The notes under the pieces are model-generated. The model was not told where the DNA came from. It worked only from the letters and a program-made list of their open reading frames with translations, and did no database searches. The position numbers and the translations under genes were made by a program. Positions 12,062-37,257 of a stretch of 64,000 nt of DNA are shown piece by piece (the stretch's first letter is position 1; the number at the start of each line of letters is the position of its first letter). The DNA is from Octopus bimaculoides (Eukaryota): assembly GCF_001194135.2 (NCBI RefSeq), contig NC_068989.1, positions 798,728-862,727 on the forward strand. Reading direction: 5' to 3'.

Positions 12062-12282
12062 ACCTTTTCGTTACTGTATTTCTGTTGAGATGCTCTGTGT
12101 TTCTTTCAATTACTTTAAATATAACAAAGAATTTAGTAAAATAACTTAGTTATCATTCAGCTGGTGTTAGGAACATGAATTGTGACTAAGGTTTGGTGGA
12201 AGATTTTAATTCAGAACTTATGAAAACAAGACATTTGTAGTCATAGCCAGAGGCAGTTTCAGCCGGGTTGGTAACGAAAGGG
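12062..12282. mobile_element. piggyBac-type MITE, family 1
   Basis: TTGA|ACCTTTTCGTTAC...GTAACGAAAGGG|TTAA. Confidence 0.75.
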
Positions 12283-14678: not shown

Positions 14679-14804
14679 CTATAAAAGGTCTGGACTGGCA
14701 AGTGGAATTACTTGGCAAATTGAATGATGTCGACGTTTTTTCAAGACACCACGATGTGTGTTGAGGTATTCTCGGAAGAAGGCCACAGTACTGTTCCATC
14801 CTTG
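14679..14804 (-). CDS. Patatin gene last coding exon ([14 protein letters not shown]...ASPDLL*)
   Basis: Acceptor ttttgtgtcttgcag; TAG stop at 14681-14679. Confidence 0.9.
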   Translation of the reverse strand, partial: QGWNSTVAFFREYLNTHRGVLKKRRHHSICQVIPLASPDLL

Positions 14805-14876
14805 CTGCAAGACACAAAATAAACCAATATTAGATTCTTCAAAGATGTAAAAAAAATCGATACAGATGAACAGAAG

Positions 14877-14911
<35 letters not shown>

Positions 14912-17794
14912 TATGCAGGCATTGGCACACTTAAAGCACAAATATACACCACATTAAATACACTGTCTATATATCTGTGGTTATGTAGATATTATACGCA
15001 CAACTATACACTGCATTAAATATACTGCTTACATCTGTGATATCCGATCTGAATATTTACAACAGATGTAGCTTGCTAAAGGCATCCAAGTATAAGGCGG
15101 TTGTGTTAAATTGGGGGTGGATTAACTCTATTATTCAAAAACAGCAACAGTCCTTCTGGTAGGCTTTCCTACAAAGCTTCTGTCCACCAAATTCCACTTA
15201 CAGGCCATTGGCTGACTCAAGGGACACTTGGCCCAATGTGCCACACAGAATGATCCCGAAACAATGGTATCTTGGGGCAAACTTCTGAACCACACAACTG
15301 TGTTTATGGAGTTGCTGTTGACACACGTCATATAACGAGCCATCTTAAAGGTAGCTCTACCATTAAACTTACATTTCACTGATGGTGTTTAATAAAATCA
15401 GAACATGTCCACAGTTGTCTACCCATGCTCTCTACACCATGTTCACTTCTGTTTTTAATTAACTTTTATTAATCTAAGTATTGCAATGATCCCCTTAGCC
15501 TTTCTTGACCACAATTAGGTTGATATTTTGTATTGTTATGCATGTAAGATAAATGAATTGATTCACTGCATTAAGTGTGTAAGCACTGATTTAACTATTA
15601 GTTTATTTGCTGAAGAGACTCCAGGGTACCCCCACCCCCCACTATTAATCATATCACTTTCTTTTATTCTCATGCAGGTAAAGGTAGGAAGACACATAAA
15701 TATCATAGCCTTTTATCCCATGACTAAATTTCTGGGTGTGTTTTGGGAATAGGATTTTTGATTGTACATGCTTCAGAATAAAGCAAAACTAGCTTTATCA
15801 TAAAGCGTCAAAGTTTCTCAATTTTACATTTTCTGACCCTTTCTTTTTTTTATGTTTGTAAGTTGTGAGAAGATGAGGAAAGGTGAAAGAACGAAAGAAC
15901 TGAGACAAAATATAAAAGTTCTGTTACCCTAATCAGGAACTGTTTGTCTTCGTCTTCCAAACAGAAGTCTCTGGTGTCAATATAACCTGTGTTTATACCA
16001 ACCGTACGGTGTTTATCTCGTTCCTACAATAGTACCAAAAAAATATAACAATGAGATGTAGTAGTAGTACACATATTAATGAATAATTACATTGGTAGAT
16101 GACCATTTGAAGGACATAGGTAGCAGAAGTGACCTTGTATATATAACTGATATTTTTTAATCAACTCCAGGAAGGTGAATGGGTAGAATCGACACTTGCA
16201 ATTGTTGACCTTTACACTTGTATCTGTCCCTCATGTACCTTTAATCTCTCAGCCAGCACAAAGCCACTCCCTCTCAGTACTACTTTTGCTCTCCTAGTTG
16301 AAGGGGTTTCGTGCGACCCTGTCAATACTGGTGTCATGTAAAGAGCACCTGAGCCAGTGCCACATAAATAGCACACATTTTGTAAAATGGAAGGGCATCC
16401 AGCCAGAGGAACTGTGCCAAAGCAGACAGTGGAGTCTGGTGCAGTTCTCTGGCTTGCCAGCGACTATCAAACCATCTAACCCATGCCAGCACGGAAGGTA
16501 GACATTAAACGATGATGATGATGATGAGATTAAATATAATCAGGCATTTGTTCTCTTGCTGTACAGTTTCTGACACTTCAATATCTTTAGTGTTGCATAT
16601 ATTGAAATATATTGCTATCTGGGTATCATACTCAATGTAGACACACCATTCGATAAAATCTCTTTGTCGGCTTTTGATAAAAAAAAACATTATATATTGC
16701 AGCAAACAAACATCATTGCTGCAGTGATTCATGAGAAAGACAGATGCATTTCACCATTTCTGGAGACTTGTCAATGCCATGCACCTGATTCCTGCTTATT
16801 TGTGCATGGTTTTACATCTACTTGCATTTTTACATGATTACCGTTTACTATGGAAAATACTGACTTCCAGGCTGTGTGTCTTTTAGTATATATTATATAT
16901 ACTACCTAATGGTGAATTAGTTTATACACTTATATGTGAAGGCATGTGGCTCAGTGGTTAGGGTTTTCAGCTCACAGTTGTAAGGTCGTAGGTACAATTC
17001 CCAGCAGCACATTATCCTTGAGCAAGACACTTTATTTCACATTGCTCCCGTCAACTCAGCAAAAATGAGTTACAGTATTAGGTCCATTTCAGCAGATTTT
17101 TACCAATTGGCTTTGTAGATTAGAGTTCAGGGAAACCTAATCCTGGTCCCTGGAAGAAGGGTTCGTGGGAAGGTCATGGTGATGGTTCTTTGTTGCTGGA
17201 GGCGGAGAAGTGTGACAGTTGAGAAAAGTTAGAATGAAAGAAAAAGAAAAAATCATGGGAGTTGAGAGAAGAAACTTTTTAGAAAGTTATGCCCCTTGGC
17301 AGCAGCAAAAGTGGTCACAAATGATTATGGAAACAATATTAATAATAAAATATAACATATATAAAACTAATATCAATACCTGTACGAACGCTCGTTTAGT
17401 ATTCGTCAACATGGTCTCCGTTAATGCTGAAAGGTAAGATTGTAGGTCATAGACTGGTCTGCCAAAGTATCCAAGAAAGCGAGACTGAACATTAATTCCT
17501 TTTGTTTCAAGAAAGTTAACCAATTCTTGATACTCGATCTACAATAAGAAAAGAATACAATGACCAGAATCAGTGGATTAATGTGAAAATGACACGGCAC
17601 CGAGACCTCGGCTGTGATGGCAAAAGCAATGGAACTAAGAGGATTTTTGCTTTCTGAATCAAAATAAGCCAATTCTTATACAATGAGTTTGAATATGTGA
17701 GCAATTAAGATCTGTAATTTAAAGACACTCAGAAATACATGTGTGGGTAAAGATTTATGCATGCACTCACATATATATATGTATATACATGTAT

Positions 17795-17827
<33 letters not shown>

Positions 17828-18215
17828 CACACACATATTCTTTTACTTGTTTCAGTCATTTGACTGTGGCCATGCTGGAGCACCACCTTCAAGGGTTTTT
17901 TAGTTGAACAAATTGACCCCAGGACTTATTGTCATTACAGTTACTTTAAGATTAGGGCTGCTTGTAGACAGTTTGATGCATTCTATATCAATATCATTCA
18001 GGGTGAATCACACACACACACTTATTCCTATATAAACATACACGTGTGTGTATATATTTATACACACATGCAGGCATACACATATACTCATTACATATAT
18101 CTGTGTGTATACACACATGCACACATACATGTATGTACATGCGTGTACACACACACACACACACACACACATATTATAAGAGACTATGATGATAGATGGG
18201 AGAAGGCATTGAGAA

Positions 18216-18254
<39 letters not shown>

Positions 18255-21200
18255 ATGGCTGAAGGCACAGAAAGTGGGTGATTGGTAGAAATAGTGTGGG
18301 CAGGGATGCTTATCAGGAATGGGAGTGGCTCCGAGGGGAGTGAGGGACATCACCACCAGAAGGGAGGGGATGTAATCTGTGCTGAGTCTGCTTTCAGCTG
18401 ATTACAGCAGCCAAGTGGTACCACAGGGAGTGATAGGAATTAGGGGATGAGAATCATGGGAAATGCTTGATGAGGCAGAGAGAGAGGTAGGGGTAAGGCC
18501 CTGCATGTATAAGCATACCAAGTGGTTTTGGGATATCAATTTTTGCAGCACTGATTATCTTGTTCCTTTGTCATCTCCTCAGTCAAGTACCGGGGTCGAT
18601 GTAATCGACTAGTCCCCTCCCCCAGCATTGTACCTTTTGTAGAAAGGATTATTTTCAAAGGGTAAAAATCTAGAAAGAAATGAAAACTTCGTTATCGACT
18701 GTTAAAGTAAGTATGCATTTTTGAGACACCCTCTGTGTGCGTGTGTGAGTGTGAGCAAAATAGTGTCATCTTTATTTGTGATGTGATTAATCAAAGCTTA
18801 CCTCATTGTTCTGATTAGTGTCCAAATAATCAAAGACATACTCAATATCATGTTCACTTCTAACAACTTTGTCAAACAGGAGGATATGGTCTTGGTAATT
18901 TAGCTCAGAATCCTAAACGAATGAAAATCATTAGTAAAATTATCTGTTATAATTAATACAACAATAGTATTTAACCTACATCCGTACATCACAAAAATGA
19001 ATTAAGAGAAATGATTCTGAGTGGTCAGTGGCCTGAATTTGGACAACAAACCCAAAGAGACATATATTAAGTGCTGTACAAGATAAATTCTTGATTTATT
19101 GAAGCTGTCTTTATTTTGAGAGAAGGTAAACAAATGCCTGGCGAAACTTGAGTAACACTGAATGAGAAGTGGAGATAGAACTCAAGAATAAAGAATTTCC
19201 TAGAATTGATGGACATTATAGAAAAGCAGTTGTTTTTTTTCTGGGTATGGGAAGACAGTTAAATGGCAGTGATCAATAGAGTAGTCGTCCTGGGTTGGTT
19301 CCAGGAAACACAAAGCTTAGGCAGCATACAAAACAGCAGCAAACATTTGCATCATTAAAAGAAAAGGAGCTAATATATATATATATACATGTATATTAAT
19401 CCATTTCTATATACACACGGAGAATATATATATATATATATATGCATTCATACATACGTGTGTATCTACTACATATGTGAGAAATTCTGTCTGTAGGTGT
19501 GTTTGTGGATAAGACGAGGTCACAAGTTAAGTGGTCAGTCTCAACCAGAAATAGGCTGAAAAGAAGCTCTCCTAGAGAGATAGCAAACACAGGAATGGCC
19601 TTTATCATTTATTACAATCAGATTTTGTGCCTTGTCAGAATTTTTATTTGAGCGCACAATCTTTTGCTTCCTATGAAAGAGATGCACTCTAATGGTCAAG
19701 AGGTCCCTCTGCTGCCAACATCAGCAGGATGAAGAGTTTGGTCTGCTGAATCTAATGATGCATGGACATGCATTAAAGCTGCAGGGTCTGCATTGCCCCT
19801 GGATACTTAAAAGTTTTAGTTTGTGAAGCGTAATTTCTTGCAGCTTGTCTCTTTGCGGGTCAGGCAAAGACCAAAACTGGGTTTCAGAAATGTGATCAGG
19901 CTCCCACAGTTGTTTGTCAGTGGAATAACATGGCCAGTGTTACATCAATGCTTACATTCTATGGAGAAATGGTGAGCCTGAATGAAACCATTGTCAAAGA
20001 GATTCTCAGCAATGACAATTTACTGAACAGCCTGTTCCAAATAACTTTCAACACAAAGACTATGGACAACTTCAAAGAATCCCTGGTCTGTTGTTGGAGA
20101 GGAGTATTGCCAATTTTGGATAAACTTTACAGGCACTGTTGCAGCATCAGCCAGACTTTTGTCTCAGAAATATGCAGGTCAATTAAATCATTCTAAACAC
20201 ATTGATTCAATGTCCAAGCAATGTTGACTTGTAGAGTTATGTTGACCAGCATTGTTGCATGTGAGACAAATCCAGTTGATAGCAAAGTCCATTGTGAGCA
20301 TCACCCTGCCACCTTCCTTTGACCAACTGAAACAGGAAGTTTTCCTGTCTGGTGGCCACCCCTTGCAAAAGAGACTGCTTAGCAGACATGACTAAACAGG
20401 CAGAAGCCATATATTCTTCATGGTCCAGGTTTTTTTTTAAATTCGTCAAGTCCCACTTACACTGGCTTTAAACCTACATATTAAGGTGCAGTCAAGTTAG
20501 ATTCCTTTGGACATGAGATGGACGAAAAATATAAAAATAAAATGTGAAATTTTAGAAGACAAGAAACAAACCATTCCAAAGACAGGCATTTCAGATTAAA
20601 ACCATTTTAGAAGCCCACAATTCTGAAGTGTAATACTCACAAGTAAGGCAGCAGTTAACATTTTCATATCGATGGTTCTTCGGTGTTGTGGGTTATGTTT
20701 AGCAATGGCCTGAAATAATAGAAATATAATTGCTACATAGCTTTTATTTTAATAAAATTTAATTTGTATTAAAGTACCGGTCTTCATGGAAATACAATGA
20801 AACAAGAGGGGTACTTGTAGTGGTATGTAGAGCATGTGATGGAGAATGACTGAATGAAAGCAAATGAAATGAAAGGAGAAACATGGTCCTCACCAAACCC
20901 ATCTGATTGTCCCATCAACTTACATCCTCCTCCATCTCATCTGTTGTACCACCAAACAGCACACTCTGCCAGGTGACCTCTATTGCTAACCAATGCCCAC
21001 CCTTAAATCTCTAGGATGCCCTCTACCCCTTACTGCATCCCTGGCCAGACCTCATGGCCACATTGTTTGATATCCGACTAAGTATATTTTTTTATAATTT
21101 CACAAAGTAATCACAATTAATTATCAGAATTAATTATCAGAATCTCACTGATATTAATTCTTAAAAAAATACAAGAACAGTTTGTAGAGTCAATATTCTT

Positions 21201-24200
21201 CAACATTTATTCCAAACTGTGTTTGTGATGACTCGTGGTAAAGGTCGTACTTTCAAGACCTGATTCTCAGTCTCTTCATTTCTGTTAGCATCTTTGGGAA
21301 ATGCATGAACACCACATCATGTTGATTTCCTTATTTTTGTATAAATCTAAGCCCATGACCCTTCCACAAGAAATCAATTTGCATATTCTACAATAATATA
21401 AATATTCTAATATATTCTTTGATTTCCATACTTTTGACATGTTTGAAAATACTAACCTTCACCAATTTATCAAAAGCATTACAAATCTCTTCATGTTTTG
21501 TACATTCCTGGAATTTCTTGCTGGTGTTTTCTTTTCTCTTCCTGTAAAATAATGTCAGAATGTGAACATGTCAAAATAATTCATTCCTACAGAATGAATA
21601 ATAAACAACTTAACAAACATACTGCTTGGTGTCTCTGCTTATTAAATAAGATTTTAAATTTTCACATTTTATTTTCCATATATTCTCTCAAATTTAAAAA
21701 AAATTCTGAGGATTTTGATGGCAAATCTTGTTGTTCTTCAGGATAATTCTCACTGACAAATCACAAATCCCATCAGAGAGATGGCCCTGCTTAATATGTG
21801 GAAAAGGTGTAAGTAGAAACTAGAAAAGATGTACTTGGTGCAAGCTCATAATAGAGCTCATAAGAAGTGCAGCAGTATCAGGGGAAGGTTAACAGAGAAA
21901 GTAGTATTTGTGTGTAACAGATATGTAGGCAACTGCATGAGGGGTCCTTCGAAGAAGTAGAGAGCTTCCATTATCTAAATGGTCAAGTCAGCAGTGGCAG
22001 AGGATGTTCAGAGACTTTAGATCCGTGGTTCCCAACCCAGGGTCTGCAGACTACTGGGAGTCCATGAACTAAATTCAAAATTTCACACACACACATACAA
22101 GGATAAGCATATGGAAAGGGGTCCATGGGAAAACTCATTTAAATAAAAGGGTTGGGAACCACAGCTCTAGATGCTAGAATAAGAATGGGTCGGGTAAAGT
22201 TCAAAGAGCTTCGATTTTTGTTGGTAACAAAGGGCCTCTCCGTCAGAGTGAAAGCTAGATTGTATGATGCCTGTGTGGGAACAGCTGTGTTACATGGCAG
22301 TGAAACACAGGGCTGTGACTGCAGAGGACTTGGAAAGGCTTGAAAGAAATGAAGTTAGCATGCTCTGGTCAAAGTGAAACTGTCTAACCCATGCCAGCAT
22401 GGAAAACTGATGCTAAATGATGATGAAGACACACAGACAGACATACATAGATAAAAATAAATAAATTCATAAAACAAGAAGATGGAATGAAGAGGCTTTA
22501 ATTACAAATCGCAATGATTGCTGTATGTTGGCATGTGATAGCTGATAACTGTAGAGGAGCTTTGAAATGCACATTATGAGGTTATTATGACAATCTAAAG
22601 CCATGCCACTGACCCATTTAAGTTACTTTCCTTAGCTCACATTTTGGAATTAAGCAAATCATACTGGTCAGAATTCTTTGTAAATCTATTTCTGTTTGTC
22701 AAAGTCTATGGTCAGAGAAAAAAGGTAACTCTAAGTCGGTAGGCATTAGTAAAAATCAGATGTATAATTGTTTACAAGATGGAATATAACAGCTTACTTG
22801 GATAGTTTGGTCTCTGGGTATTCAGGGAGTGTGCCACATCCATTGTCTTTGAGTCGGTCTTCCAAATGGGTCCTCATAATCTCTGGTTCATCGTCTGAAA
22901 ACTGATTAGATTAAAACATTGTAAGTAAAGAACATTGATTAGTATATACAAGTACATTTCTCATCATCATAGGTTTAATGTCTACTTTTCCATGCCAGTT
23001 GGGGTAAAGTTTCCTATGATCTGATACTGTTCTTGTCACCAACCCTTGCTTGTTTTCAAGGCAGGTAATAACAAACAGCTGCGATATGCTTGCACAGAGA
23101 GCGGTCAACAAGCAACATTGCGTGAAGGAGTGTTTTGTTTATGAAGACTGCAAATGTCAGGACATATGAAGAAACCCAGACATACTTTACTTTTCTTAAA
23201 TTATATTGTTACTAAAAATATTGCTTATGAGCAGTGAATGAAGACACATGAAGTAAGAGGGAAACACGAACTTACACACACACACACACACACACACTGG
23301 TGCGCTGGGTTTTTAGTTTCTTTCTAGCAAATCCTTTGACAATGCTTTGGTCAGTCCAGGACTATAGTAGAAGACACTTGCCCATGGCGACACGCAGTGG
23401 GACTGAACTTAAAACCATGCAGTTGGGAAGTAAACTTCTTAACCACACAGCCAGCCTGGCACCTATCAATTGGTATTTGTTGTCTCACAGAGGCACACAA
23501 TTATTATCATAAATGGTTCCTCTCTCTGTCCATTTCTTCATGACAGCATAAATCAGAAACATTTGCAAACAGTTCAATCCAGCAAAATTTATAGTGTGAC
23601 ACCATGACCACCACTTGCAAATTCATACATTGATTTAGGTTGGATTGGCTGCTCTCCTAAATGTAGTCATTCACGGATTAGATTTGGATTGATGTTTGGC
23701 CCCAAAAGGTTTAAATATCTTTTCTAGGAACAGAGGGAAGTGATATTTCAAGCTGCAGGTCAGCCTCACAATTCGTTCATTTAATTTTTAAAAACTTTCT
23801 TAACTTCCATCTATCTTAAGTCAAATTGTTAATCTGTTATAATACACCAGTGTGTGTGTGTGTGTGTGTGTGTGAATTAACATTTTGTCTGTAACTTTTG
23901 AATGTAATGAATTACTAGAGAGGGGTTACTGAAAAGGGAGAGATCTAATGTGAAGAGGAGAAGTGAGAGATGGAGAGAGAGAGGGAGAGAATGTGAATTA
24001 GAAGGGAAGGAAGAAAGAAAGAGTGTTATGGCAGTTTCATTATTTAAATATTTACTCCACTGGAATTGATATGGCACAGTGGGTGAGAACGGTTTTATTT
24101 ATTTCTTGGAAATTAAAGAGAGACAGTGGAAGGATCTGTGTGTGTGGAAGTAAAAAATGACGGCTGATGTATAAAAGGCAGGTTTGAAATAAGAATAAGA

Positions 24201-27200: not shown

Positions 27201-29386
27201 AATGATAATTTTATTTATTCCTTATAATGGCACAAGTAATTCTATTATTGGTTGAGATAAGTCATACAAAGGAAAACAAATGTATTTCAGCACCCAAACT
27301 CTATAAGCAATCTAAAAGGAATTTAACAGAATACCAATTCTATTTGCTGTCATCTTTGATGGCATAGTTATAAACTAAATAAATATATCCTCTCAGATTA
27401 AAATGAAACCAAAACATTTACAAAAAAAAAGTCATAATTGCTAATATTTCATTCACAGAAACAATAAAAACAAATATATAAAAATAACATACCAAGAGAA
27501 ATCCAATCGTCTTTTCATTAAAGGTACCAAATCTGACTGATTTGTCAAAGAATTGCAACAATTTATCAAGAGGACGAAGTCGATTAAGGAAAGTATCTTC
27601 TGGTGCCATTGAAAGCCACCAACCTGGGAAAGAAGATACATTTTTTTAAAATGAAGAGCTTGTATAATATTTCCCCATGGCTGGACATGTTTATGCAGAA
27701 TATCGAAAATAAACGACACTGCTTGTATGACATTGACACTCCTTTACAACTGTCAAGACAAGGAGAAGAAGGAAACACACACACGCATATACATAAATGA
27801 TGGGTTTCTTCTAGTTTCCCTCAACCAAATTCATTCACAAGGCTTTGGGTGGTCTGGGGCTTTAGTAGAAGATATTTGCCCAAGGTGCCACACAGTGGAA
27901 CTGAAACTGTGATTATGTGGTTGGGAAGCAAACCTCTTCACCATACACCAAAGCCATCTATATATTATATTTAGTGTAAATACATCATTAAAAGGCAAAT
28001 TTACTGCAGTATTTGTCCAGGGAAAACATCTTATGGATGTGCTGTATTTAAAACCAATTTAAAATCAAAGGAAGATGAAAATCATCCCCACAGTGGCTAG
28101 TGAGAATGCTGGATGTATTTCAGCTTCATTGAGCATTGTCAATGGCATGTACTTTGAGGGATCAGTATAGTCTCTGCCAGAGTTAAACAGTATAGTCTCT
28201 GCTAAATATCCCTGCTGAGAGCTTGCTGATACAGATTGATAAGATTTGTGCAAATTTTACATGAGTAGAAGCTTTTTTTTAACAATTTTCACCCTGAAAA
28301 TCACCTGTTACTTGTGTTTTAAAGTGAAAAAGAGGAGAAAGTGAAAGAACGTATGAACGTGTATATGTAATGGATGTGTGTGTGAGTGAGAGAGAGTGCC
28401 ACTTACACATACATGAGAACACACACGTTCACTTTCTCTCTCTCTCATGCACACATGCACATGTACATACAAAAAAGATGTACGCATATGTATTGATGTA
28501 TGTACGTATACATGACAACACACCCCTTCACTCACTCACTCTCTTTCTCTCTTTCTTTCACACACACATGTTCATACATCTTTCACTTTAAAACAAAAGT
28601 AAATAAATTGAAATTTTTTACAGAAATTAACAAACTCTGGATGATGAAATCACATTCAGTTAAAAATATTTCTAAATGATTAAGACATTGTGTACGTCAA
28701 AAAGTCAACGTTTTTTTTCCTTAGAGAGCACGAAGACTATGCATGTGTATATGTCACGCATAACGGATGTGTGTTTGTGTTGATTGGCACACCATGACAT
28801 TCATTATATGTGTGTGTATGTGTGCTGATGTCATGAAAGCCATTTTTTTTTCATCAAGAAATAACAAACAAAAATTGAGTTTAATCGTTTAAATAGCAGT
28901 GCAAATATCACAAAAATTTGTACTGCACTGCCAAAGGAAAGTATGAAAATAAATATGCAAAAAAAAAAATAAGATAAAATATACAATTTCTGAGGTATTT
29001 TGAGTACACACAAACATCTCTAGAGTTTTAGTATTATTGAGATTCTAATTTCCTCATGCACACACACACACACACACCACTCAAGTTTATAAATTATGTT
29101 TACAGCTTATCCAGTGTTAGCTTTAATTTCATTTCTTAAAAGTAAACTCATGTAGCACCACATGTTTATCTGAATAACTACTATGTCATTCTTGTCACGT
29201 CATTTTCGTACTTAGTTACACCAAAGGATAAATTTTTCTGAACCGACAATATCCTGTTGCAAATTCTGCAGCCACCTCCCTACCACCACCTTCTCCCTTT
29301 CTTTTTCCACTTAGTTGTATACTTCCAGTATTTCTTCACATCCTTTATTTCTTTCATCTTTCTCCTTTCTTTTTTCTCTTCTCCTC

Positions 29387-29417
<31 letters not shown>

Positions 29418-29734
29418 CCCTACTCTCTAAATTATTTCTCCAAACCCCTTAAAGTCCTTCATTAACTTTGAGAAAGGCATAAGGTTTGATATAATTTTTA
29501 TGAAGCTGTTAGCTAGTCATTAATTAATGAACGAATATCTGTTTTAGCTACTTTGTTTAAGATATAAAAGTGTGATTCCTGCAAACATGCGATTCACATA
29601 CAGGTATGACAATGTGGTTAAGAAGTTTGCTTAGAACCATGTGTCTGATGGTTCAATACCATGGTGTGGACACTGTTGGGCTGGTGTTCTATACAATTGT
29701 TGTGGGTTAATCAATAAAAGAAATTGGTGGACAA

Positions 29735-29789
<55 letters not shown>

Positions 29790-30473
29790 TGACTTCTTTT
29801 TCCTCTTTGCCTTCACTTGTGTTCGCTGGTTGCAAACAAACTTCTCCATTCTTCAAACAAACAATGCTGTATACTTGCAATCCATGGTGAAAGTATGCCT
29901 GAGCTTCTTGAGATGTTGCACAATCATCTATATANNNNNNNNNNNNNNNNNATATATATATATATATATATATAAAGATGAGGATGTGTGTATGTGTCTG
30001 TCTGTGTGTATCTCTAAAACTCAAGAACTACACAACCGATTTCATTGAAATTTTACATATGCCTTCTTAGGGTCCAGGTAGTGTCATAGGCCAAAAAATT
30101 TTCAACTTCATGCCTAATGCAAGCCCAGAGCAATCTCTTATATCTTCCACTATTTCAGTATTACGTGTCAAAAGTGAAACAATAACATCTCTCTATTGTA
30201 ATGTGAGATAATACTTTCACTTTAATACTTTCACTATTAATACTGAAACTATAAAAGTGAAACTATTATCTCACATATATACAGGCATACATACATATAT
30301 ATACATGCATACCTATATATAATATATATTATGTACATATATATGTATACATCTGCACATATGTATATATAGATATATATGTATATGTATATATATAGAT
30401 GTATATGTATAGATGTATATATATATACATGTATATATATAGTTATATATGTATATAAGTATGCATATATGTG

Positions 30474-30506
<33 letters not shown>

Positions 30507-30572
30507 GAATAAATATATGTATGCATGTATATATGTAATATGTACACATATATACATGCATATACATATTTA

Positions 30573-30646
<74 letters not shown>

Positions 30647-33600
30647 TACATATACATACATTTATACACACACATATATATATATCAATATATATAAATA
30701 TATATAGGTGCAGGTGTGGATGTGTGGTAAGAAACTTGGTTCCAAAACACATGGACCTGCTTTCACTCCCACTGTGTGGTAACTTGGCATGTGTCTTCTG
30801 CCATAGCCTCAGACCAACCAAAGCCTTGTCAGTGGATTTCGTAGACAGAAACTGAAAGAAATCAATCGTATATGTAAGTGACAAGGATTAGTTTGTCCAG
30901 GCAAAGGGTCAGGACACGAATTGCAAGAAAAGAATAGCAATGTGATATAGGACAGTGGAACTTGTGAGTGATTTTGACCGACCTATTGAAATATGAGACT
31001 TACCATCAAAACAATGGATTGGATAATTGCACAGAAGTCCTCCATCAACATAATGTTTCTTTGTTCCATTATTGGCAGAATAACTGGGTGGGCTGAATAT
31101 TCCAGGGATGGACATTGACATACGCACAGCCAGGCGTACTGGCATATGTGGAGTTGTCTTTGGGTGGCAATATTCAACAGCCATGTGGTTAACATTAGTC
31201 ACAACCACACATAATTCTCGACCGTAATGTTTGTAGATCTTGAAGAAGAAAGGAAATGAAACCAACATTTGAGTTTGGCATAAAACTTGATTAAAAAGAA
31301 AAACAATTTTTTTTTCTAATATTTCCAGTAATTTGCTGATCTTTTACAAACTTTTTCCCCATATTAGCAATGATAAAATTTTAAACTTTAAATTTTTAAA
31401 ATCTAAAATTGTGGAGTGATGTCAATGATTGCACTGGGCAACAAAAAAAGATTTATTGTCTGCTGCCCAGACAAATGGTGCTGTACCAAACTAAATCGAG
31501 TACGCTGATTCCGAATCTCAACTCAAAATTGCTATAGCACGTCAGGATTTTGAGTTATGCGCATAATTATATTTTAATACTATATTAGAATCAAGAATAG
31601 TTAAGTTCAATGTAAATAATCATTATAATAGCATATTAGTAGTGTATATAGTAAATTTATGTCCAAGGCAAATAGTATTATAATATAATGGTACATAGTA
31701 TATTTATGTTAAGGGAATGCTCACTTTATTTTTGATATGCTCATCTCAGAAATGTTTGAGACACTTGCTCTTGCGATTATGCATCATGCTGGTCTCTCGT
31801 TGTAGGAATCAGCAGTAGTCACCCATCATCCGTGGATTGAACCGGCCTTGATACCTCATTTCCAAGATAAGTTGGGAAAAATCGAGATGAGAATGCAAGA
31901 AATGCATTTTAAGGGACATTCAGTATCGTAATTGCAGTTGCAGCAGATACTGGTGTCACACAAATGGCACCTGTGCTGGTGGCAGATAATAGCACCCATT
32001 ATACTCTCAGAGTGGTTGGCATTAGGAAGGGCATCCAGTTGTAGAAACCATGCCAAATCAGACTTGTGTCTGGTGCAGCCTTCCAGTTTACCGTCCCTGG
32101 TCAAACCATCTAACCCATGCCAGCATGGACGACAGACGTTAAACGATGACGGCAACGATGACGAATGACCAATCAGAAAATCAGAAAACACTCACCTCCC
32201 AGAAAGTAATATTTGGATTCCCAGTTTTTTCCAAAAATACTTTTCGAAACCATTCATCAATTTTTTTGCCAGGATTCCAGCCATAGTCTTTGAGTAGGTT
32301 TGGTAAAAGGCTCAAATATCCCCATTTATGATCTACAAGAAATAAATTTATAAGCAACAATATTAAAGTTTAGGTAACAAGACACATATTTCATTGCTCC
32401 ATGAAACAAATGTAATCTTTAAACTTCACTGTGGATTCTTTGTTTAGCACAAACTCACTTTTACAAAAATTGGAAAAGTGTAGTATATAATTTACATTAT
32501 CCTAATATATTACTGGTATATTTTTTATTGAGTAAAGTAGCATTAAAATTATACTTTAGTCTCAGCAAGAATGCAACAGAGAACTATATGATTGTTACAA
32601 TAATAGGTCTTGTAACCCAGCATTCTTATTGCAAAACAAGCGTGATTAGAGAGTGCAGAGGGGGAGTGAGAAGTGAGTGGCGAAAACCTGGATATATATA
32701 TAGAGTGGGGTGAGGCTACCGGATAGCATTGGTACAGAGAAACATGGCCGTGAGGTCAAAATATCAGCTGAACCAATATATCTGAAAGTTTATGTTATCA
32801 AGGTAACCCAAAACCAGTTCAATTCAAAGCAGACTGAAATAATATCTATGATACATGAACACATACAAAAAGAACACAGAAACAAGAAATATAATATTCT
32901 AAGAAAAACCGGTTTACTTTTTAAACTTATGATGGCATCAGTAGATAATGAAACAATAAAAAATAAACATGGAAATTCTATAAATCATGACATTTGGTTA
33001 TTTCGCTATTTATGTATGCTAAAAACAATTTAGAGAAATTATGCTTATTAGATTATAGGAAAAGCAATCATAATTAAGGTGTTATTTACTACTGAAATAT
33101 TTAAATGCTTTTCTATATTTATGGGAATATTTCAATGTAAGACTGGTTCTACAATTTAATCATTTTAATTTTGAAGTAATTATATAATACATTTCCTCTA
33201 GGACGATATTTCCAATAATGACCAGAAGAGAGAATGTTGACAACAGCTTCATGGATTTCTTTCAACCAAGATGGAGCTGGAAGCAGGAAGAATGGTCATA
33301 TTGTTGAATAAAGTATCAAAGTATTTTCAAATGACCAGCGTTTCTTTGCAATCTGGATATATTCCATTGAAGTGGTTTACTTTTACAGACATTGAGCAAA
33401 AGCCAAAGATATGACTAAGTTTGCAGATTATCAATAACAAATTCAAAGAGAAGACAAGCAAAATCCAGTGTTTGGTGCTTTCAGTGGTTCCAGCAGTCTT
33501 CCTTCGCTTGTTGAATCTCAAATGCCTTCTCAGAAAAATTCTTTCCATTATTGATAGAATGCCACAGAACCTTCCAAAACCAGACACCAATATCTCAGCA

Positions 33601-34481
33601 TTATCCAGGCCTAAAGACATAATCAAATCCTGTCATATATCTCAAAGAAGTAAGAAAAGGATTTAACGAAGAATTTGTAGAGTTTACAGAACCGTTTAAA
33701 ACTGATATTGCTTCTCAGATTGGCATCAAGTAAGATGTCATGGAGTTCAAATTATATCATTTGATAACAGACAACCGTTTGGAGTTTCTTTTTCTAAATG
33801 TAGAAAATTCCTTACACCTTTATAGCATATATTACAGGCACCACTCTACTTCAATCTGAACCAGCAAGTGATAATGGCCACACCTTCCACCAAATTATCA
33901 CGGCAGTCTATCAATATCCCTATTACGAATATAACGGCCACACATTCTGCCAAAATGTTATAGTAGTACTTACCAAGCATCAACTTGCCAATGTCTTGAC
34001 TTAAGTAGTCCAAGAGTTCAGTGCTTGAGACGCCAACACTGATTAACGCAGCAACCATGGCCCCAGCGCTTGCACCAGCCAAGCGTTTTGTATTATTTAA
34101 TACACCAAGTTCTTCAAGGACCTGGAAACAAAAGAAAACAACAACAGCTCAGTTTAAAGAAAAAAGAGAATAACAATAATAACAACAACAATATCATTGT
34201 CATTAACATAATCTTTTGTCATCATCATCATCATGTTTGACTTTTCCTTTAATCCTAGAACTGATGAAGTATACTCTTTTACTCTTTTACTTGTTTCAGT
34301 CATTTGACTGCGGCTATGCTGGAGCACCGCCTTTAGTCGAATCAAATCGACCCCAGGACTCATTCTTTGTAAGCCTAGTACTTATTCTATCGATCTCTTT
34401 TGCCGAACCGCTAAGTTACGGGGACGTAAACACACCAGCATCGGTTGATGGTGGGGGGGACAAACACAGACACACAAACAC

Positions 34482-34512
<31 letters not shown>

Positions 34513-36928: not shown

Positions 36929-36977
<49 letters not shown>

Positions 36978-37257
36978 CTGAATCTGATGTAAACTCTCAG
37001 TCTAAAAGAAATAAACATGATTCACGATGACATCTCACCATTAAACTCCCACAATATGCAATGCCTTTATTTCCACCACCTTCAAACACCAAATTCTCAA
37101 AGGGATAATCATAGTGTATTAGGGTTCCAAGTTGTACTTCACCCGAATCAGGGACATCACTTCGGTCCACAAACTGTATCCTTTCCTGCTGGAGGGTCTC
37201 ATTATATTCAGATTTAAACCACCTGGAATGGGAACCACACTTCACAGTGTTTCCCAT
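14679..37257 (-). CDS. Patatin-like phospholipase domain protein with inserted EF-hand pair; 12 coding exons, 539 aa
   Basis: Manual assembly join(37257-37039,34121-33974,32332-32196,31238-31004,27623-27493,22901-22798,21541-21457,20709-20641,18912-18802,17538-17380,16023-15928,14804-14679) = 1620 nt with no internal stops; all 11 introns are GT-AG with matching phases. Motifs: G60-G-G-N-K-G65 oxyanion loop, G-A-S91-A-G nucleophile elbow, D233-G-G, EF loop D407-T-N-Q-N-N-E-I-E-Y-Q-E418. Confidence 0.93.
15928..16023 (-). CDS. Patatin gene coding exon 11 ([32 protein letters not shown])
   Basis: Acceptor ggtactattgtag, donor GTAACA; RTxxIxTxxxxTxDF motif typical of the C-terminus of ExoU/VipD-like patatins. 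Confidence 0.93.
17380..17538 (-). CDS. Patatin gene coding exon 10 ([21 protein letters not shown]...TNTKRAFVQ)
   Basis: Acceptor ttttcttattgtag, donor GTATTG; completes the EF loop. Confidence 0.92.
18015..18252. repeat. Compound (CA)n/(TA)n/(GA)n microsatellites
   Basis: Directly visible. Confidence 0.95.
18802..18912 (-). CDS. Patatin gene coding exon 9 ([13 protein letters not shown]...[12 protein letters not shown])
   Basis: Acceptor ttcattcgtttag, donor GTAAGC; first 7 residues of the canonical EF loop. Confidence 0.9.
19640..20440 (-). mobile_element. Highly decayed non-LTR RT remnant
   Basis: Minus strand [12 protein letters not shown] (cf. F.V..GVRQG) and LHISETKV (cf. L.IS..KT.V). 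Confidence 0.4.
20641..20709 (-). CDS. Patatin gene coding exon 8 ([23 protein letters not shown]), degenerate EF-hand
   Basis: Acceptor ttctattatttcag, donor GTGAGT; 69 nt, phase 0 to 0. Confidence 0.85.
21457..21541 (-). CDS. Patatin gene coding exon 7 ([28 protein letters not shown])
   Basis: Acceptor attattttacag, donor GTTAGT; phases 2 to 0. Confidence 0.88.
21775..22425 (+). mobile_element. RTE-clade LINE 3' fragment interrupted by a hAT MITE
   Basis: WPC.ICGKGV...ESFHYL...GCSE|[41 protein letters not shown]; ends ctaacccatgccagcatggaaaac...(gat)n. Confidence 0.85.
22023..22164. mobile_element. hAT (Charlie/Buster-type) MITE
   Basis: TIR CCGTGGTTCCCAACCC...GGGTTGGGAACCACAG; 8-bp TSD CTTTAGAT (22015-22022) / CTCTAGAT (22165-22172). 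Confidence 0.88.
22798..22901 (-). CDS. Patatin gene coding exon 6 ([35 protein letters not shown])
   Basis: Acceptor ttaatctaatcag, donor GTAAGC; phases 0 to 2. Confidence 0.88.
23297..23465 (-). mobile_element. SINE family A, 5' half
   Basis: Homologous to 7820-7968. Confidence 0.8.
24780..26330 (+). mobile_element. Helitron Rep/PIF1-helicase fossil, antisense in the patatin intron
   Basis: [10 protein letters not shown] at 25461-25490; [25 protein letters not shown] at 26241-26315 (cf. TINKSQGQTFD.VGIYL..PVFSHGQLYV); decayed DGP Walker A near 25190; many stops and frameshifts. Confidence 0.8.
27493..27623 (-). CDS. Patatin gene coding exon 5 ([16 protein letters not shown]...NEKTIGFLL)
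   Basis: Acceptor tcttctttcccag, donor GTATGT; phases 1 to 0. Confidence 0.92.
27805..27945 (-). mobile_element. SINE family A, 5' half
   Basis: Homologous to 7820-7968. Confidence 0.8.
29925..30240 (+). mobile_element. Possible non-autonomous Helitron-like element 5' part
   Basis: TCTATATA..(TA)n, GT-rich tract, then aagaactacacaaccgatttcattgaaatttt, an architecture typical of non-autonomous Helitrons; no 3' hairpin/CTAG identified. Confidence 0.35.
30265..30705. repeat. Complex (TA)n/(TATG)/(TACA) microsatellite array
   Basis: About 440 nt of alternating purine-pyrimidine repeats; source of the spurious YI-rich ORFs. Confidence 0.97.
30706..30873 (+). mobile_element. SINE family A, 5' half
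   Basis: ggtgcaggtgtggatgtgtggtaagaaac...gtggatttcgtagacagaaactgaaagaa. Confidence 0.8.
31004..31238 (-). CDS. Patatin gene coding exon 4 ([15 protein letters not shown]...[12 protein letters not shown]...[16 protein letters not shown])
   Basis: Acceptor ttcttcttcaag, donor GTAAGT (phase 1); conserved patatin AVRMSMSIP and catalytic DGG. Confidence 0.95.
31940..32165 (+). mobile_element. Non-autonomous element with RTE-type 3' tail
   Basis: gtggttggcattaggaagggcatccag...aaccatctaacccatgccagcatgga..acgttaaacgatga; the same tail ends the RTE fragment at 22370-22425. Homologues at about 3735-3915(-), 5835-6020(+), 16290-16530(+), 37490-37650(+), 42130-42270(+), 57500-57690(-). Confidence 0.8.
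32196..32332 (-). CDS. Patatin gene coding exon 3 ([29 protein letters not shown]...[10 protein letters not shown])
   Basis: Not in the ORF track; acceptor atttcttgtag, donor GTGAGT; phases 1 to 0 match neighbours. Confidence 0.93.
33200..33620 (-). mobile_element. Possible decayed LINE RT remnant
   Basis: Elevated GC; weak resemblance (LWLLLNVC...SRLQ) to the RPISLLN.D.K...RL motif; interrupted by stops. Confidence 0.25.
33974..34121 (-). CDS. Patatin gene coding exon 2 ([30 protein letters not shown]...GKLML)
   Basis: Acceptor ttttgtttccag, donor GTAAGT (phase 1); catalytic GXSXG. Confidence 0.95.
34275..34589 (-). mobile_element. SINE family A, young copy lacking its head
   Basis: Well-preserved body and tail with several CpGs retained; truncated at the fold-back at 34590. 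Confidence 0.9.
34556..34646. repeat. 34-bp inverted repeat made of SINE sequence
   Basis: 34556-34589 vs 34613-34646 match at 32/34; 23-nt loop. Confidence 0.9.
34836..35157. repeat. Fold-back element with perfect 78-bp inner inverted repeat
   Basis: 34923-35000 is the exact reverse complement of 35038-35115 (37-nt loop); outer arms 34836-34879 and 35114-35157 also pair with one mismatch. Confidence 0.95.
36548..36777 (-). mobile_element. Third copy of the tRNA-headed hammerhead SINE, in the intron after coding exon 1
   Basis: Minus strand: tRNA head, CAGTGACCTGAA, (AAT/AAC)n, GACAC-CTGATGA-A-GGCTG-gagggtatat-CAGCC-GAAAC, then an about 30-nt deletion relative to the other copies. Confidence 0.85.
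36930..36975. repeat. (CA)n microsatellite
   Basis: Directly visible, about 60 nt from the exon 1 donor. Confidence 0.97.
37039..37257 (-). CDS. Patatin gene coding exon 1 (MGNTVKC...[23 protein letters not shown])
   Basis: Acceptor tttttgtttcag ends at 37262, ATG 4 nt into the exon, donor GTGAGA at 37038 (phase 0); contains the GXGXXG motif. Confidence 0.92.

What the first reader, a model, noticed from the sequence alone, without database searches (positions are those of the whole stretch)
14679..37257. Intron-rich animal gene for a bacterial-type (ExoU/VipD-like) patatin phospholipase with an EF-hand insert
Seen: a 539-aa protein with an intact catalytic set (GGGNKG, S91, D233). After the DGG region comes an insert of about 170 aa containing EF-hands, then [15 protein letters not shown]...FLIRQG. 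Known: the [13 protein letters not shown] start and the RT..I.T....T.DF end characterise the ExoU/VipD-like patatin group (CDD cd07207 as I recall), not vertebrate PNPLA1-9. Patatins are normally Ca2+-independent. Inference: a Ca2+-sensing phospholipase lineage of invertebrates with essentially no functional characterisation, possibly from ancient retention or early horizontal acquisition; 11 spliceosomal introns rule out contamination.
Basis: partly seen in the sequence, partly recalled or inferred. Interest (0 to 1): 0.7.

Follow-up and report, generated by a model that had tools for sequence, protein, structure and literature searches.

The report
Octopus patatin phospholipase with built-in EF-hands
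This is a real, intact, 12-exon Octopus bimaculoides gene for a bacterial-type patatin lipase with a calcium-sensor (EF-hand) module inserted in it. It belongs to an old, widespread, uncharacterised family found in marine invertebrates and, with the same insert, in some bacteria.

Summary
On the minus strand, 12 GT-AG exons (37257 to 14679) encode a 539-aa protein identical to RefSeq XP_014784560.1 (Octopus bimaculoides, "uncharacterized protein LOC106879483"). The assembly gap at 29935-29951 lies in a microsatellite inside intron 4 and does not touch the coding sequence.

The protein has a full patatin catalytic set: GGGNKG at residues 60-65, Ser91 and Asp233. Its nearest solved relatives by sequence and fold are VipD, ExoU, PlpD and CBASS CapE/CapV, not iPLA2-beta (PNPLA9).

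Compared with about 335-aa bacterial relatives, it carries a 132-aa insert (residues 307-438). The insert is a long helix plus an EF-hand pair. In Octopus only the second loop (DTNQNNEIEYQE) keeps the calcium ligands.

- **Bacteria:** the same architecture, EF-hands included, occurs in Myxococcota (for example the complete genome of Cystobacter fuscus) and Actinomycetota. These form a sister clade to the animal proteins, so the direction of transfer is unresolved.
- **Age in animals:** the gene is old, because 9-10 of its 11 introns sit at the same positions in scallop and amphioxus.
- **N-termini:** most animal members start with MGN, an N-myristoylation-type motif.

Most likely it is a cytosolic, membrane-anchored, calcium-regulated phospholipase A. 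I found no published characterisation.

The parts
56191..56235 (-). Probable 3' end of an upstream non-coding (5'UTR) exon of the same gene. Its 5' limit was not determined.
   Evidence: tblastn of the N-terminal extension of the O. vulgaris 592-aa model P0122 hits here at 93% identity. The exon ends with the donor GGCAAG|gtaaat. An in-frame TAA upstream and the lack of an ATG make it non-coding in O. bimaculoides.
37039..37261 (-). Coding exon 1. The acceptor tttcag lies 4 nt before the ATG at 37257. It encodes residues 1-73: the MGNTVKCG N-terminus, the [13 protein letters not shown] oxyanion-hole motif (GGGNKG = 37080-37063) and the first helix.
33974..34121 (-). Exon 2, residues 74-122. 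Contains the nucleophile elbow GASAG (34076-34062) with Ser91.
32196..32332 (-). Exon 3, residues 123-168 ([12 protein letters not shown]...ITFWE).
31004..31238 (-). Exon 4, residues 169-246. Contains YCHPKTTP and the catalytic Asp233 in VDGG (DGG = 31046-31038).
29935..29951 (.). Assembly gap (17 N) inside intron 4, flanked by (TG)n/(GA)n and (TA)n microsatellites. No effect on the CDS.
27493..27623 (-). Exon 5, residues 247-290. Contains [19 protein letters not shown], a signature shared only by the long-form (EF-hand-bearing) clade.
22798..22901 (-). Exon 6, residues 291-325. The 132-aa insert starts here at residue 307.
21457..21541 (-). Exon 7, residues 325-353. Part of the long helix 322-357 that leads into the EF-hand pair.
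20641..20709 (-). Exon 8, residues 354-376. Contains the degenerate EF-hand loop 1, [12 protein letters not shown] (20694-20659).
18802..18912 (-). Exon 9, residues 377-413. Contains the first seven residues of EF-hand loop 2, DTNQNNE (18822-18802). The donor is GAG|gtaagc.
17380..17538 (-). Exon 10, residues 414-466. Contains the rest of EF loop 2, IEYQE (17538-17524), its exit helix, the end of the insert (residue 438) and the helix that precedes the last strand.
15928..16023 (-). Exon 11, residues 467-498. Contains the C-terminal core strand RTVGINTG (16008-15985) and DF...FLIR.
14679..14804 (-). Exon 12, residues 499-539 plus the stop codon. Contains the C-terminal helix [14 protein letters not shown] and a disordered tail.

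Best explanation
LOC106879483 encodes an intracellular serine-aspartate (Ser91/Asp233) acyl hydrolase of the patatin fold, most probably a phospholipase A or lysophospholipase.

Its core is the bacterial 'short' patatin type, the group whose solved members are VipD, ExoU and PlpD. A 132-aa module is inserted between the last-but-one core strand (residues 285-291) and the helix-plus-strand that closes the core (445-477). The module is a 36-residue helix followed by a paired EF-hand.

I infer that calcium binding to the EF pair changes how the module packs against the catalytic domain or the membrane, and so switches the lipase on. In Octopus only loop 2 would bind; in most relatives both loops would. 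This would parallel the need of VipD, ExoU and CapV/CapE for an external activator (Rab5, ubiquitin and a cyclic nucleotide, respectively).

The animal proteins also carry an N-terminal MGN... motif, typical of N-myristoylated and often palmitoylated proteins. The enzyme is therefore probably tethered to the cytosolic face of membranes.

Shown here: the gene model, the catalytic motifs, the fold, the EF-pair fold, conservation of the calcium ligands across the family, and the age of the gene. Inferred: calcium dependence, substrate, acylation and localisation.
For: - **Intact, conserved gene.** The model matches RefSeq exactly and is 97% identical to the O. vulgaris/sinensis orthologue.
- **Patatin domain.** Pfam Patatin E = 1.5e-28 over residues 56-243. 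The family alignments show G60, G62, G89, G93, D233, G234 and G235 invariant and S91 nearly invariant.
- **Nearest solved relatives.** The family profile hits VipD at 4e-22, ExoU at 1.6e-21, PlpD at 9.5e-15 and CapE at 4.5e-10. Foldseek gives VipD 1.4e-11, then CapE/CapV, patatin-17, PlpD and ExoU, with iPLA2-beta at only 8e-5.
- **Structure model.** AF2 with 68 sequences gives pLDDT 86.8 and pTM 0.85. The insert has pLDDT 81-97. The helix-loop-helix pair has short beta bridges at 365-366 and 414-415, the hallmark of paired EF loops.
- **The insert is an EF-hand pair.** The family profile hits EF-hand proteins (SCaMC-1, CDPK calmodulin-like domains, S100, troponin C) over the insert. Foldseek hits S100 and troponin C with the same region.
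- **Calcium ligands are conserved.** EF2 is canonical in 115/122 animal and 27/30 bacterial members. EF1 is canonical in 89/122 and 29/30.
- **No signal peptide is evident by eye; no predictor was run.** The N-terminus is hydrophilic.
- **Acylation motif.** 76/122 animal members start with MG and 57/76 with MGN. Position 6 is S/G/C/T/A in 66/76, and 31/76 have a Cys at positions 3-8. Only 2/30 bacterial members start with MG.
Against: - No biochemical or expression data exist for any member, as far as the searchable library shows.
- In Octopus, EF loop 1 has lost positions 5 and 12, and loop 2 has Asn rather than Gly at position 6. Pfam EF-hand scores for this protein are below the gathering thresholds.
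- The Octopus N-terminus has Lys at position 6 (MGNTVK), an uncommon residue at this position among the MG-starting family members (3 of 76).
- I could not inspect model coordinates. Where the EF module sits relative to the active-site cleft is unknown, so the switch mechanism is an analogy and not an observation.
- A patatin fold alone does not fix the substrate. It could be phospholipid, lysophospholipid, a neutral lipid or a transacylation substrate.
Confidence: 0.6

Rival explanations
1. The EF-hand module is a structural relic in cephalopods. The enzyme is active or regulated independently of calcium.
For: EF loop 1 is degenerate in all three Octopus paralogues examined. A third paralogue (P0139) has lost the ligands of both loops yet keeps the whole module. 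Pfam EF-hand hits are sub-threshold.
Against: Loop 2 keeps D1, N3, N5, E9 and E12 in two Octopus paralogues (DTNQNNEIEYQE, DKNSDDKIEYEE). EF2 is canonical in 115/122 animal members. That level of conservation argues that ligand positions are under selection.
Confidence: 0.25
2. It is a neutral-lipid lipase or transacylase (as PNPLA2/3 are) or a pure lysophospholipase, not a phospholipase A.
For: The patatin fold supports all of these chemistries (established knowledge of PNPLA2, PNPLA3, NTE and patatin-17). Nothing in the sequence fixes the substrate.
Against: The nearest characterised relatives (VipD, ExoU, PlpD, CapV/CapE) are described as phospholipases in their PDB entry titles and molecule names, except PlpD, which is listed only as a patatin-like protein. 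That they act on membrane phospholipids is established knowledge. The putative N-terminal acyl anchor suggests a membrane rather than a lipid-droplet target.
Confidence: 0.25
3. It is a secreted venom or digestive phospholipase of the salivary gland.
Against: There is no hydrophobic signal peptide. The N-terminus is hydrophilic and starts with MGN, a cytosolic acylation motif. EF-hands of this type are characteristically cytosolic sensors (general knowledge).
Confidence: 0.03
4. It is bacterial contamination, a recent horizontal transfer or a pseudogene.
For: The closest non-animal relatives are bacterial, at 36-47% identity.
Against: - There are eleven GT-AG introns in AT-rich, repeat-laden octopus DNA.
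- 10 of the 11 intron positions are shared with the scallop Argopecten, and 9 (a tenth lies within 3 residues) with amphioxus.
- Orthologues exist in Octopus vulgaris/sinensis and Argonauta.
- The ORF is intact and the catalytic residues are conserved.
Confidence: 0.01
5. It is a divergent member of a characterised vertebrate PNPLA1-9 orthogroup.
For: It shares the Pfam Patatin domain.
Against: - The profile search of all PDB sequences puts VipD/ExoU/PlpD at E = 1e-15 to 1e-22. iPLA2-beta (PNPLA9) is not among the 60 best, which reach E = 0.014.
- By fold, iPLA2-beta ranks below every bacterial patatin.
- No vertebrate protein appears among the 120 best hits of three database searches.
Confidence: 0.02

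Closest known systems
Short (about 335-aa) bacterial patatin-like proteins. Sources name them 'NTE family protein'; animal relatives are labelled 'YqhO-like' after Bacillus subtilis YqhO.
   Same: - 34-47% identity over the catalytic core.
- The same start ([14 protein letters not shown]).
- The same GxSxG and DGG motifs.
- The same closing helix plus RTI.I.T....DF strand.
   Different: They lack residues 307-438 (the long helix plus EF-hand pair) and the GWWLSM...RLRPL signature. They have no N-terminal acylation motif. They are themselves largely uncharacterised.
Long-form bacterial patatins with an EF-hand pair (Myxococcota including Cystobacter fuscus Cbf 10; Acidimicrobiia/Ilumatobacteraceae; Propionibacteriaceae)
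   Same: The architecture is identical from end to end, at 36-38% identity. This includes GWWLSM, both EF loops in the same places and the C-terminal strand. They form a sister clade to the animal proteins.
   Different: - They are intronless genes in dense bacterial contigs.
- Their N-terminus is a conserved MATLQPWNI... segment rather than MGN.
- Both EF loops are nearly always canonical.
- They are uncharacterised.
Legionella VipD/VpdC and Pseudomonas ExoU
   Same: They are the best solved-structure matches by sequence and fold. The Ser-Asp dyad and glycine-rich oxyanion loop are the same. They share the concept of a latent lipase that needs an activator.
   Different: - Identity is only 15-17%.
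- They are secreted bacterial effectors with large C-terminal domains (Rab5-binding or membrane-localisation) that have no counterpart here.
- Their activators are host proteins, not an internal calcium sensor.
CBASS effectors CapV / CapE
   Same: Compact patatin fold, with Foldseek E = 1e-8 to 1e-9 and TM about 0.5 on the target. Ligand-gated activation.
   Different: Weak sequence similarity (NCBIfam CBASS_lipase E = 0.009). They are activated by cyclic nucleotides and filament formation, and have no EF-hands.
Cytosolic phospholipase A2 alpha (GIVA cPLA2)
   Same: A functional analogy only: a Ser-Asp lipase whose action on membranes is triggered by cytosolic calcium.
   Different: Calcium is sensed by a C2 domain, not by EF-hands. 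The relation of the fold is remote (Foldseek E = 1.5e-3). There is no sequence homology at the family level.
iPLA2-beta / PNPLA9 and the other vertebrate PNPLAs
   Same: Patatin domain and Ser-Asp dyad.
   Different: It is calcium-independent and is regulated by separate calmodulin and ankyrin repeats (established knowledge). It is a much more distant match than the bacterial patatins.
Calcium-dependent protein kinases (CDPKs) and recoverin-type calcium-myristoyl switches
   Same: In CDPKs an enzyme is fused to its own EF-hand sensor, and the family profile actually hits CDPK calmodulin-like domains. Recoverin-type proteins combine N-myristoylation with EF-hands.
   Different: These are different enzymes. 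Here the sensor is inserted inside the catalytic fold rather than appended to it. A myristoyl switch is pure conjecture.

Membership tests
Patatin-like phospholipase (Pfam PF01734) | HMM score above the gathering threshold | tested here: met
   100.8 bits against a cut-off of 27.7; residues 56-243 cover profile positions 1-188 of 191.
Patatin-like phospholipase (Pfam PF01734) | Oxyanion-hole G-G-G-x-[KR]-G, nucleophile G-x-S-x-G and catalytic D-G-[GA] | tested here: met
   GGGNKG at 60-65, GASAG with S91 and VDGG with D233. These positions are invariant or nearly invariant in alignments of 16-68 family members.
Patatin-like phospholipase (Pfam PF01734) | Patatin alpha/beta fold | tested here: met
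   AF2 pLDDT 86.8 and pTM 0.85. Foldseek probability is 1.00 to VipD, CapE, CapV, patatin-17, PlpD and ExoU.
   No CDD library was available.
   Profile against PDB: VipD 4e-22, ExoU 1.6e-21, PlpD 9.5e-15. iPLA2-beta and patatin-17 are not in the best 60. The NCBIfam best hit is VpdC at 5.7e-18, far below its equivalog cut-off.
ExoU / VipD proper (secreted T3SS/T4SS effectors) | C-terminal Rab5-binding or membrane-localisation domain; secretion-system context | tested here: not met
   Significant sequence matches to VipD and ExoU lie within the patatin core, residues ~52-241; a further VipD stretch over residues 474-509 is not significant (i-Evalue ~2e4). The VpdC score of 64 bits is far below the 1000-bit cut-off. 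This is a eukaryotic nuclear gene.
EF-hand calcium-binding pair | Pfam EF-hand model above the gathering threshold in this protein | tested here: not met
   EF-hand_6 scores 22.8 against 25, EF-hand_1 20.4 against 25.4 and EF-hand_7 20.1 against 30. Many orthologues do pass, according to the precomputed Pfam columns.
EF-hand calcium-binding pair | 12-residue loop with oxygen ligands at positions 1, 3, 5 and 12, plus a hydrophobic residue at position 8 | tested here: met
   Loop 2, D407-T-N-Q-N-N-E-I-E-Y-Q-E418, fits. Loop 1, N359[11 protein letters not shown]370, does not.
EF-hand calcium-binding pair | Paired helix-loop-helix fold | tested here: met
   Helices 322-357/368-375 and 396-406/416-425 with beta bridges at 365-366 and 414-415. 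Foldseek hits S100 and troponin C. The profile hits SCaMC-1, CDPK and S100.
EF-hand calcium-binding pair | Actual calcium binding | not testable with these tools
   Needs ITC, 45Ca overlay or a structure.
Vertebrate PNPLA1-9 orthogroups | Nests within one orthogroup, with a vertebrate orthologue | tested here: not met
   There is no vertebrate protein among the 120 best hits of three searches. PNPLA9 matches only at fold level, E = 8e-5. No explicit tree with PNPLA1-9 could be built because those sequences were not retrievable.
N-myristoylated proteins | Met-Gly start with a small or uncharged residue at position 6, and experimental acylation | tested here: inconclusive
   The family consensus MGN..[SGC] is strong, but Octopus has Lys at position 6. 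No NMT predictor or experiment was available.

The most novel reading that the evidence does not exclude
The animal and bacterial long-form proteins would form one ancient inter-domain family of calcium-switched patatin phospholipases. The family would have been exchanged once between bacteria and the stem of eumetazoans, before the cnidarian-bilaterian split. In animals it would have been fitted with an N-terminal myristoyl/palmitoyl anchor. This would give marine invertebrates an EF-hand-gated membrane phospholipase that works in parallel to, and independently of, the C2-domain cPLA2 system. It would also make Cystobacter-type bacteria a tractable model for the enzyme.
Probability: 0.3. Interest if true: 0.7.

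Novelty: new variant of a known kind. Interest (0 to 1): 0.5.

Why it matters
Patatin-type lipases are textbook calcium-independent enzymes. The calcium-triggered release of fatty acids in animals is attributed to cPLA2, which senses calcium through a C2 domain.

A patatin lipase with its own EF-hand sensor would be a second, independent solution to the same problem. It is conserved from cnidarians to amphioxus, expanded in molluscs and lost in vertebrates. It would be an unexplored node of lipid signalling, membrane repair or immunity in marine invertebrates.

The same architecture in Myxococcota and Actinomycetota gives a clean case of ancient inter-domain gene sharing. It also offers easy bacterial material for biochemistry.

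For genome annotation, the analysis shows that many 300-430-aa 'YqhO-like' or 'R571' animal models are truncated or split versions of this longer gene.

Tried and rejected
- **Tandem paralogue in the window.** tblastn with LOC106879487 (P0125) and P0139 hits only the same 12 exons. The paralogues lie elsewhere on the chromosome.
- **Longer N-termini.** The 610-aa UniProt model (A0A0L8G3H7) takes its extra 71 residues from an interspersed repeat copy at about 37.5-37.7 kb, so I rejected it. The 592-aa O. vulgaris model uses an upstream exon that is non-coding in O. bimaculoides.
- **Direction of transfer.** NJ trees give 100% support for the short/long split and for monophyly of the bacterial long forms. 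Animal monophyly fails (28/100 and 4/50 bootstraps) only because the very divergent amphioxus paralogue P0140 drops one node. Animals and bacteria are sister groups, so topology cannot polarise the transfer. No ML software was available.
- **Giant-virus or phage vector.** A scan of IMG/VR gave one weak, core-only hit, so there is no support.
- **Literature.** Six searches found nothing on this family: patatin plus EF-hand, ExoU, YqhO-like, R571, and HGT/metazoa.
- **Conserved bacterial neighbours.** Only the Myxococcota share a downstream NlpC/P60-like gene, and it is sub-threshold in Pfam. I did not pursue it.
- **Other long ORFs in the window.** Pfam found nothing for the repeat ORF or the ORF at 50.2 kb.
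- **Intron comparison with other phyla.** Gene loci for Lytechinus P0134 and Exaiptasia P0007 were not on record, so I could not extend the comparison to an urchin or a cnidarian.


Full report
**What is in the window.** The window is AT-rich (GC about 0.30-0.41) and full of microsatellites and interspersed repeats, as expected for a cephalopod genome.

From the open segments, the homologues and the splice signals I rebuilt a 12-exon coding model. The exons are 37257-37039, 34121-33974, 32332-32196, 31238-31004, 27623-27493, 22901-22798, 21541-21457, 20709-20641, 18912-18802, 17538-17380, 16023-15928 and 14804-14679. Every intron is GT...AG, and the CDS is 1620 nt (539 aa).

An exact-sequence look-up shows this protein is XP_014784560.1 / XP_014784561.1 / XP_052826301.1, "uncharacterized protein LOC106879483" of Octopus bimaculoides.

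**The assembly gap.** The 17 N at 29935-29951 sit between (TG)n/(GA)n and (TA)n runs. They are inside intron 4 (31003-27624), over 1 kb from exon 4 and over 2 kb from exon 5. The junction of exons 4 and 5 (...IHCFDG|[11 protein letters not shown]...) is contiguous and almost invariant in all homologues, bacterial ones included. The gap has no bearing on continuity or frame of the coding sequence.

**The transcription unit is longer than the finding.** A polypyrimidine/AG acceptor lies 4 nt upstream of the ATG, so coding exon 1 starts at 37261. An exon ending at 56191 (donor GGCAAG|gtaaat) is 93% identical to part of the N-terminal extension of an O. vulgaris 592-aa model. In O. bimaculoides it is preceded by an in-frame TAA and has no ATG, so I read it as a 5'UTR exon.

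The 610-aa UniProt model A0A0L8G3H7 draws its extra N-terminus from a copy of an interspersed repeat. That repeat has 8 copies in the window. The extension is most likely an annotation artefact.

**The enzyme core.** Pfam Patatin matches residues 56-243 at E = 1.5e-28. GGGNKG (60-65), Ser91 (GASAG) and Asp233 (VDGG) are present. These positions are invariant or nearly invariant in family alignments.

Among all PDB sequences, the protein alone hits VipD (8.5e-14), ExoU (2e-10) and PlpD (1.7e-5). A 16-sequence profile sharpens this to VipD 4e-22, ExoU 1.6e-21, PlpD 9.5e-15 and CapE 4.5e-10. iPLA2-beta and plant patatin are absent from the 60 best hits. The best NCBIfam model is the Legionella effector VpdC, at 5.7e-18 but far below its equivalog cut-off.

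An AlphaFold2 model built on 68 sequences is confident (pLDDT 86.8, pTM 0.85). Foldseek ranks VipD first (1.4e-11). CapE/CapV, patatin-17, PlpD and ExoU follow, then iPLA2-beta (8e-5) and cPLA2 (1.5e-3) (an earlier model gave the same order).

The CDD model itself could not be run. The protein is not an ExoU or VipD orthologue: identity is 15-17% and their C-terminal domains are missing.

**The insert.** The closest relatives outside animals are about 335-aa bacterial patatins, at 34-47% identity. Aligned to seven of them, the Octopus protein has one large extra block, residues 307-438 (132 aa). After the block, homology resumes through the helix and the [15 protein letters not shown] strand.

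In the model the block is a 36-residue helix (322-357) followed by two helix-loop-helix units. Short beta bridges at 365-366 and 414-415 mark a paired EF-hand, and pLDDT is 81-97. The family profile hits SCaMC-1, CDPK calmodulin-like domains, S100 proteins and troponin C across exactly this block. Foldseek finds S100 and troponin C.

Loop 2 (D407-TNQNNEIEYQ-E418, split by intron 9) has canonical ligands. Loop 1 ([12 protein letters not shown]) has lost them. Pfam EF-hand scores for this one protein are just sub-threshold.

Across 122 animal and 30 bacterial long-form sequences, loop 2 is canonical in 115 and 27, and loop 1 in 89 and 29. The ligands are therefore clearly under selection in the family, and cephalopods have lost one site.

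The C-terminal strand 473-477 has pLDDT above 90. R472 and I476 are invariant, and T473 is invariant among the 16 long-form sequences and at least 90% conserved once short bacterial forms are added. DSSP strand status can only come from pairing with the core sheet, since the C-terminal region has no other sheet.

**Distribution.** A search with the C-terminal half alone returned octopod paralogues, bivalves, an annelid, a sea urchin and amphioxus. Unexpectedly it also returned full-length bacterial proteins with the same EF-hand insert.

The bacterial proteins are real:
- One lies on a 122-kb, gene-dense contig of a Bryobacterales MAG.
- A scan of one genome per GTDB species found about 50 long-form genes. 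These are in Myxococcota, including the complete chromosome of Cystobacter fuscus Cbf 10, and in Actinomycetota (Acidimicrobiia/Ilumatobacteraceae, Propionibacteriaceae, Micropruina).

A profile search shows the long form throughout molluscs, cnidarians (Hydra, Clytia, Actinia, Oculina, Rhopilema, Sanderia), echinoderms, annelids and amphioxus. It is usually multi-copy and every entry is "uncharacterized". No vertebrate, arthropod, nematode, fungal or protist protein appears among the best 120 hits of any of the three searches. The lists are truncated, so this is not proof of absence.

At 50% clustering, the insert plus C-terminus finds 88 clusters at E <= 1e-10 among 1.84 billion representatives. 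The family is real but modest in size.

Many 300-430-aa animal models are truncations. In Apostichopus the 377-aa patatin gene is followed on the same strand by a separate 185-aa "EF-hand" gene, which looks like a split model.

**Age and origin.** Exon mapping of the scallop and amphioxus genes places introns at Octopus-equivalent residues as follows:
- **Octopus:** 73, 122, 168, 246, 290, 324, 353, 376, 413, 466 and 498.
- **Argopecten:** 74, 122, 168, 247, 290, 325, 353, 375, 414, 466 and 498.
- **Branchiostoma:** 73, 122, 168, 247, 290, 325, 373, 413, 466 and 498.

Thus 10 of the 11 Octopus introns are shared with scallop and 9 to 10 with amphioxus. An extra intron at residues 213/214 is shared by scallop and amphioxus and has been lost in Octopus. 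The gene structure therefore predates the protostome-deuterostome split, and cnidarian members push the gene back further. Contamination and recent transfer are excluded.

In NJ trees the short/long split and the monophyly of bacterial long forms get 100% bootstrap support. The animals form the sister group, except for one very divergent amphioxus paralogue that drops one node, probably through long-branch attraction. One ancient inter-domain transfer is the simplest reading.

The direction of that transfer is not resolved. Bacterial short forms favour a bacterial origin of the core. The eukaryotic flavour of EF-hand pairs, and the known appetite of myxobacteria for eukaryote-like genes (general knowledge), leave the reverse possible. 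A scan of IMG/VR gave no viral intermediary.

**An added observation: the N-terminus.** Of the 122 animal sequences, 76 begin with MG. Of those, 57 begin with MGN, 66 have S/G/C/T/A at position 6 and 31 have a Cys at positions 3-8, often as MGNC.GK. Only 2 of 30 bacterial sequences begin with MG.

This is the classical N-myristoylation, and often dual-acylation, signature (established knowledge of NMT substrates). It points to a cytosolic, membrane-tethered enzyme. The Octopus protein (MGNTVKCG) keeps G2, N3 and C7 but has a less favourable Lys at position 6. No signal peptide is present, which argues against a secreted venom or digestive role.

**How it probably works.** What is shown: a Ser-Asp patatin hydrolase with an EF-hand pair built into the catalytic fold, calcium-ligand conservation across two domains of life, and an animal-specific acylation motif.

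What is inferred: cytosolic calcium binds the EF pair and, through the long connecting helix, alters lid or interface geometry or membrane engagement, activating phospholipid hydrolysis. VipD, ExoU and CapV/CapE all need an activator, and here the activator would be internalised. The enzyme would thus be a functional analogue of cPLA2. I give this reading a confidence of 0.6.

The main rivals are that the module is a calcium-blind relic in cephalopods (0.25), and that the substrate is not a diacyl-phospholipid. The second is not exclusive of the main reading.

**Novelty and verdict.** The gene, its domains and its family are already in public databases as unnamed predictions. Six full-text searches found no paper on a patatin lipase with intrinsic EF-hands.

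I class it as a new variant of a known kind. It is a good, correct observation whose interpretation needs two amendments: the family is shared with bacteria, insert included, and only one calcium site survives in Octopus. Interest 0.5.

Noticed in passing
window 5828-6013, 16325-16515, 22374-22423, 31856-32191, 37500-37649, 42224-42268, 44436-44614, 57503-57673: An interspersed repeat (about 180-340 bp, 69-87% identity between copies) gives pseudo-ORFs reading 'CWHGLDGLT...LDALPNAN'. Four copies lie in introns of the gene. The copy at about 37.5-37.7 kb is the source of the extra 71 N-terminal residues of UniProt A0A0L8G3H7 (610 aa), a probable mis-annotation. Pfam finds nothing in the ORF.
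   Followed up: partly
window 56191-56235 (minus strand) and 37258-37261: A probable 5'UTR exon lies 19 kb upstream of the start codon, and there is an acceptor 4 nt before the ATG. The gene therefore spans at least 41.5 kb, beyond the finding's coordinates. The O. vulgaris 592-aa model treats this exon as coding.
   Followed up: partly
window 44721-44977, 48915-49240, 50230-50239: Three further assembly gaps lie upstream of the coding exons, within the long first intron if the 56.2-kb exon is real.
   Followed up: no
window 50222-50740 (+): A 172-aa ORF next to a gap looks by eye like the tail of a retroelement reverse transcriptase (…SLDKTVVMFQPA…VDKFGYLGS…). Pfam gave no hit, so this is unconfirmed.
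   Followed up: partly
window 30250-30700 and 29740-29990: Intron 4 contains very long (TA)n/(TG)n/(TATG)n-type simple repeats. They generate long spurious ORFs of Y/I/C/V repeats.
   Followed up: no
L084 (Apostichopus japonicus MRZV01000885.1) 8001-12288 and 15261-18294: The 377-aa 'PNPLA domain-containing protein' gene is followed on the same strand by a separately called 185-aa EF-hand gene. This is almost certainly one long-form gene split in annotation. Many 300-430-aa 'YqhO-like' or 'R571' animal entries look similarly truncated.
   Followed up: partly
L082 (Argopecten) and L083 (Branchiostoma) versus the window: Scallop and amphioxus share an intron at Octopus-equivalent residues 213/214. 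Octopus lacks it, so the intron was lost within exon 4 in the cephalopod lineage.
   Followed up: yes
L001 9494-10195 and the corresponding ORFs in L002, L004, L005, L007, L009, L012: In Myxococcota-type loci the long-form patatin gene is followed, overlapping by 4 nt in L001, by a conserved gene. That gene shows sub-threshold NlpC/P60 / Peptidase_C92 (permuted papain fold) similarity. It may be a functional partner in lipid or cell-wall chemistry.
   Followed up: partly
P0133, P0239 (JGI metagenome proteins): JGI/IMG names two bacterial long-form homologues 'arachidonate 5-lipoxygenase', although they contain only patatin and EF-hand domains. The naming is unexplained and probably an annotation-transfer error.
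   Followed up: no
P0139 (Octopus vulgaris, 490 aa, named 'NHL repeat-containing 2-like') and P0140 (Branchiostoma, 495 aa): These divergent paralogues keep the whole insert but have lost the calcium ligands in both EF loops. P0139 also has GCGTKA instead of GGGxKG and G-V-G-T-G in place of GxSxG, so it may be catalytically dead.
   Followed up: partly
bacterial long forms P0135-P0137, L002-L012: The bacterial proteins share a conserved N-terminal segment (MATLQPWNIRIxQVGxPxLPPxD) of unknown role. It sits in place of the animal MGN acylation motif.
   Followed up: no
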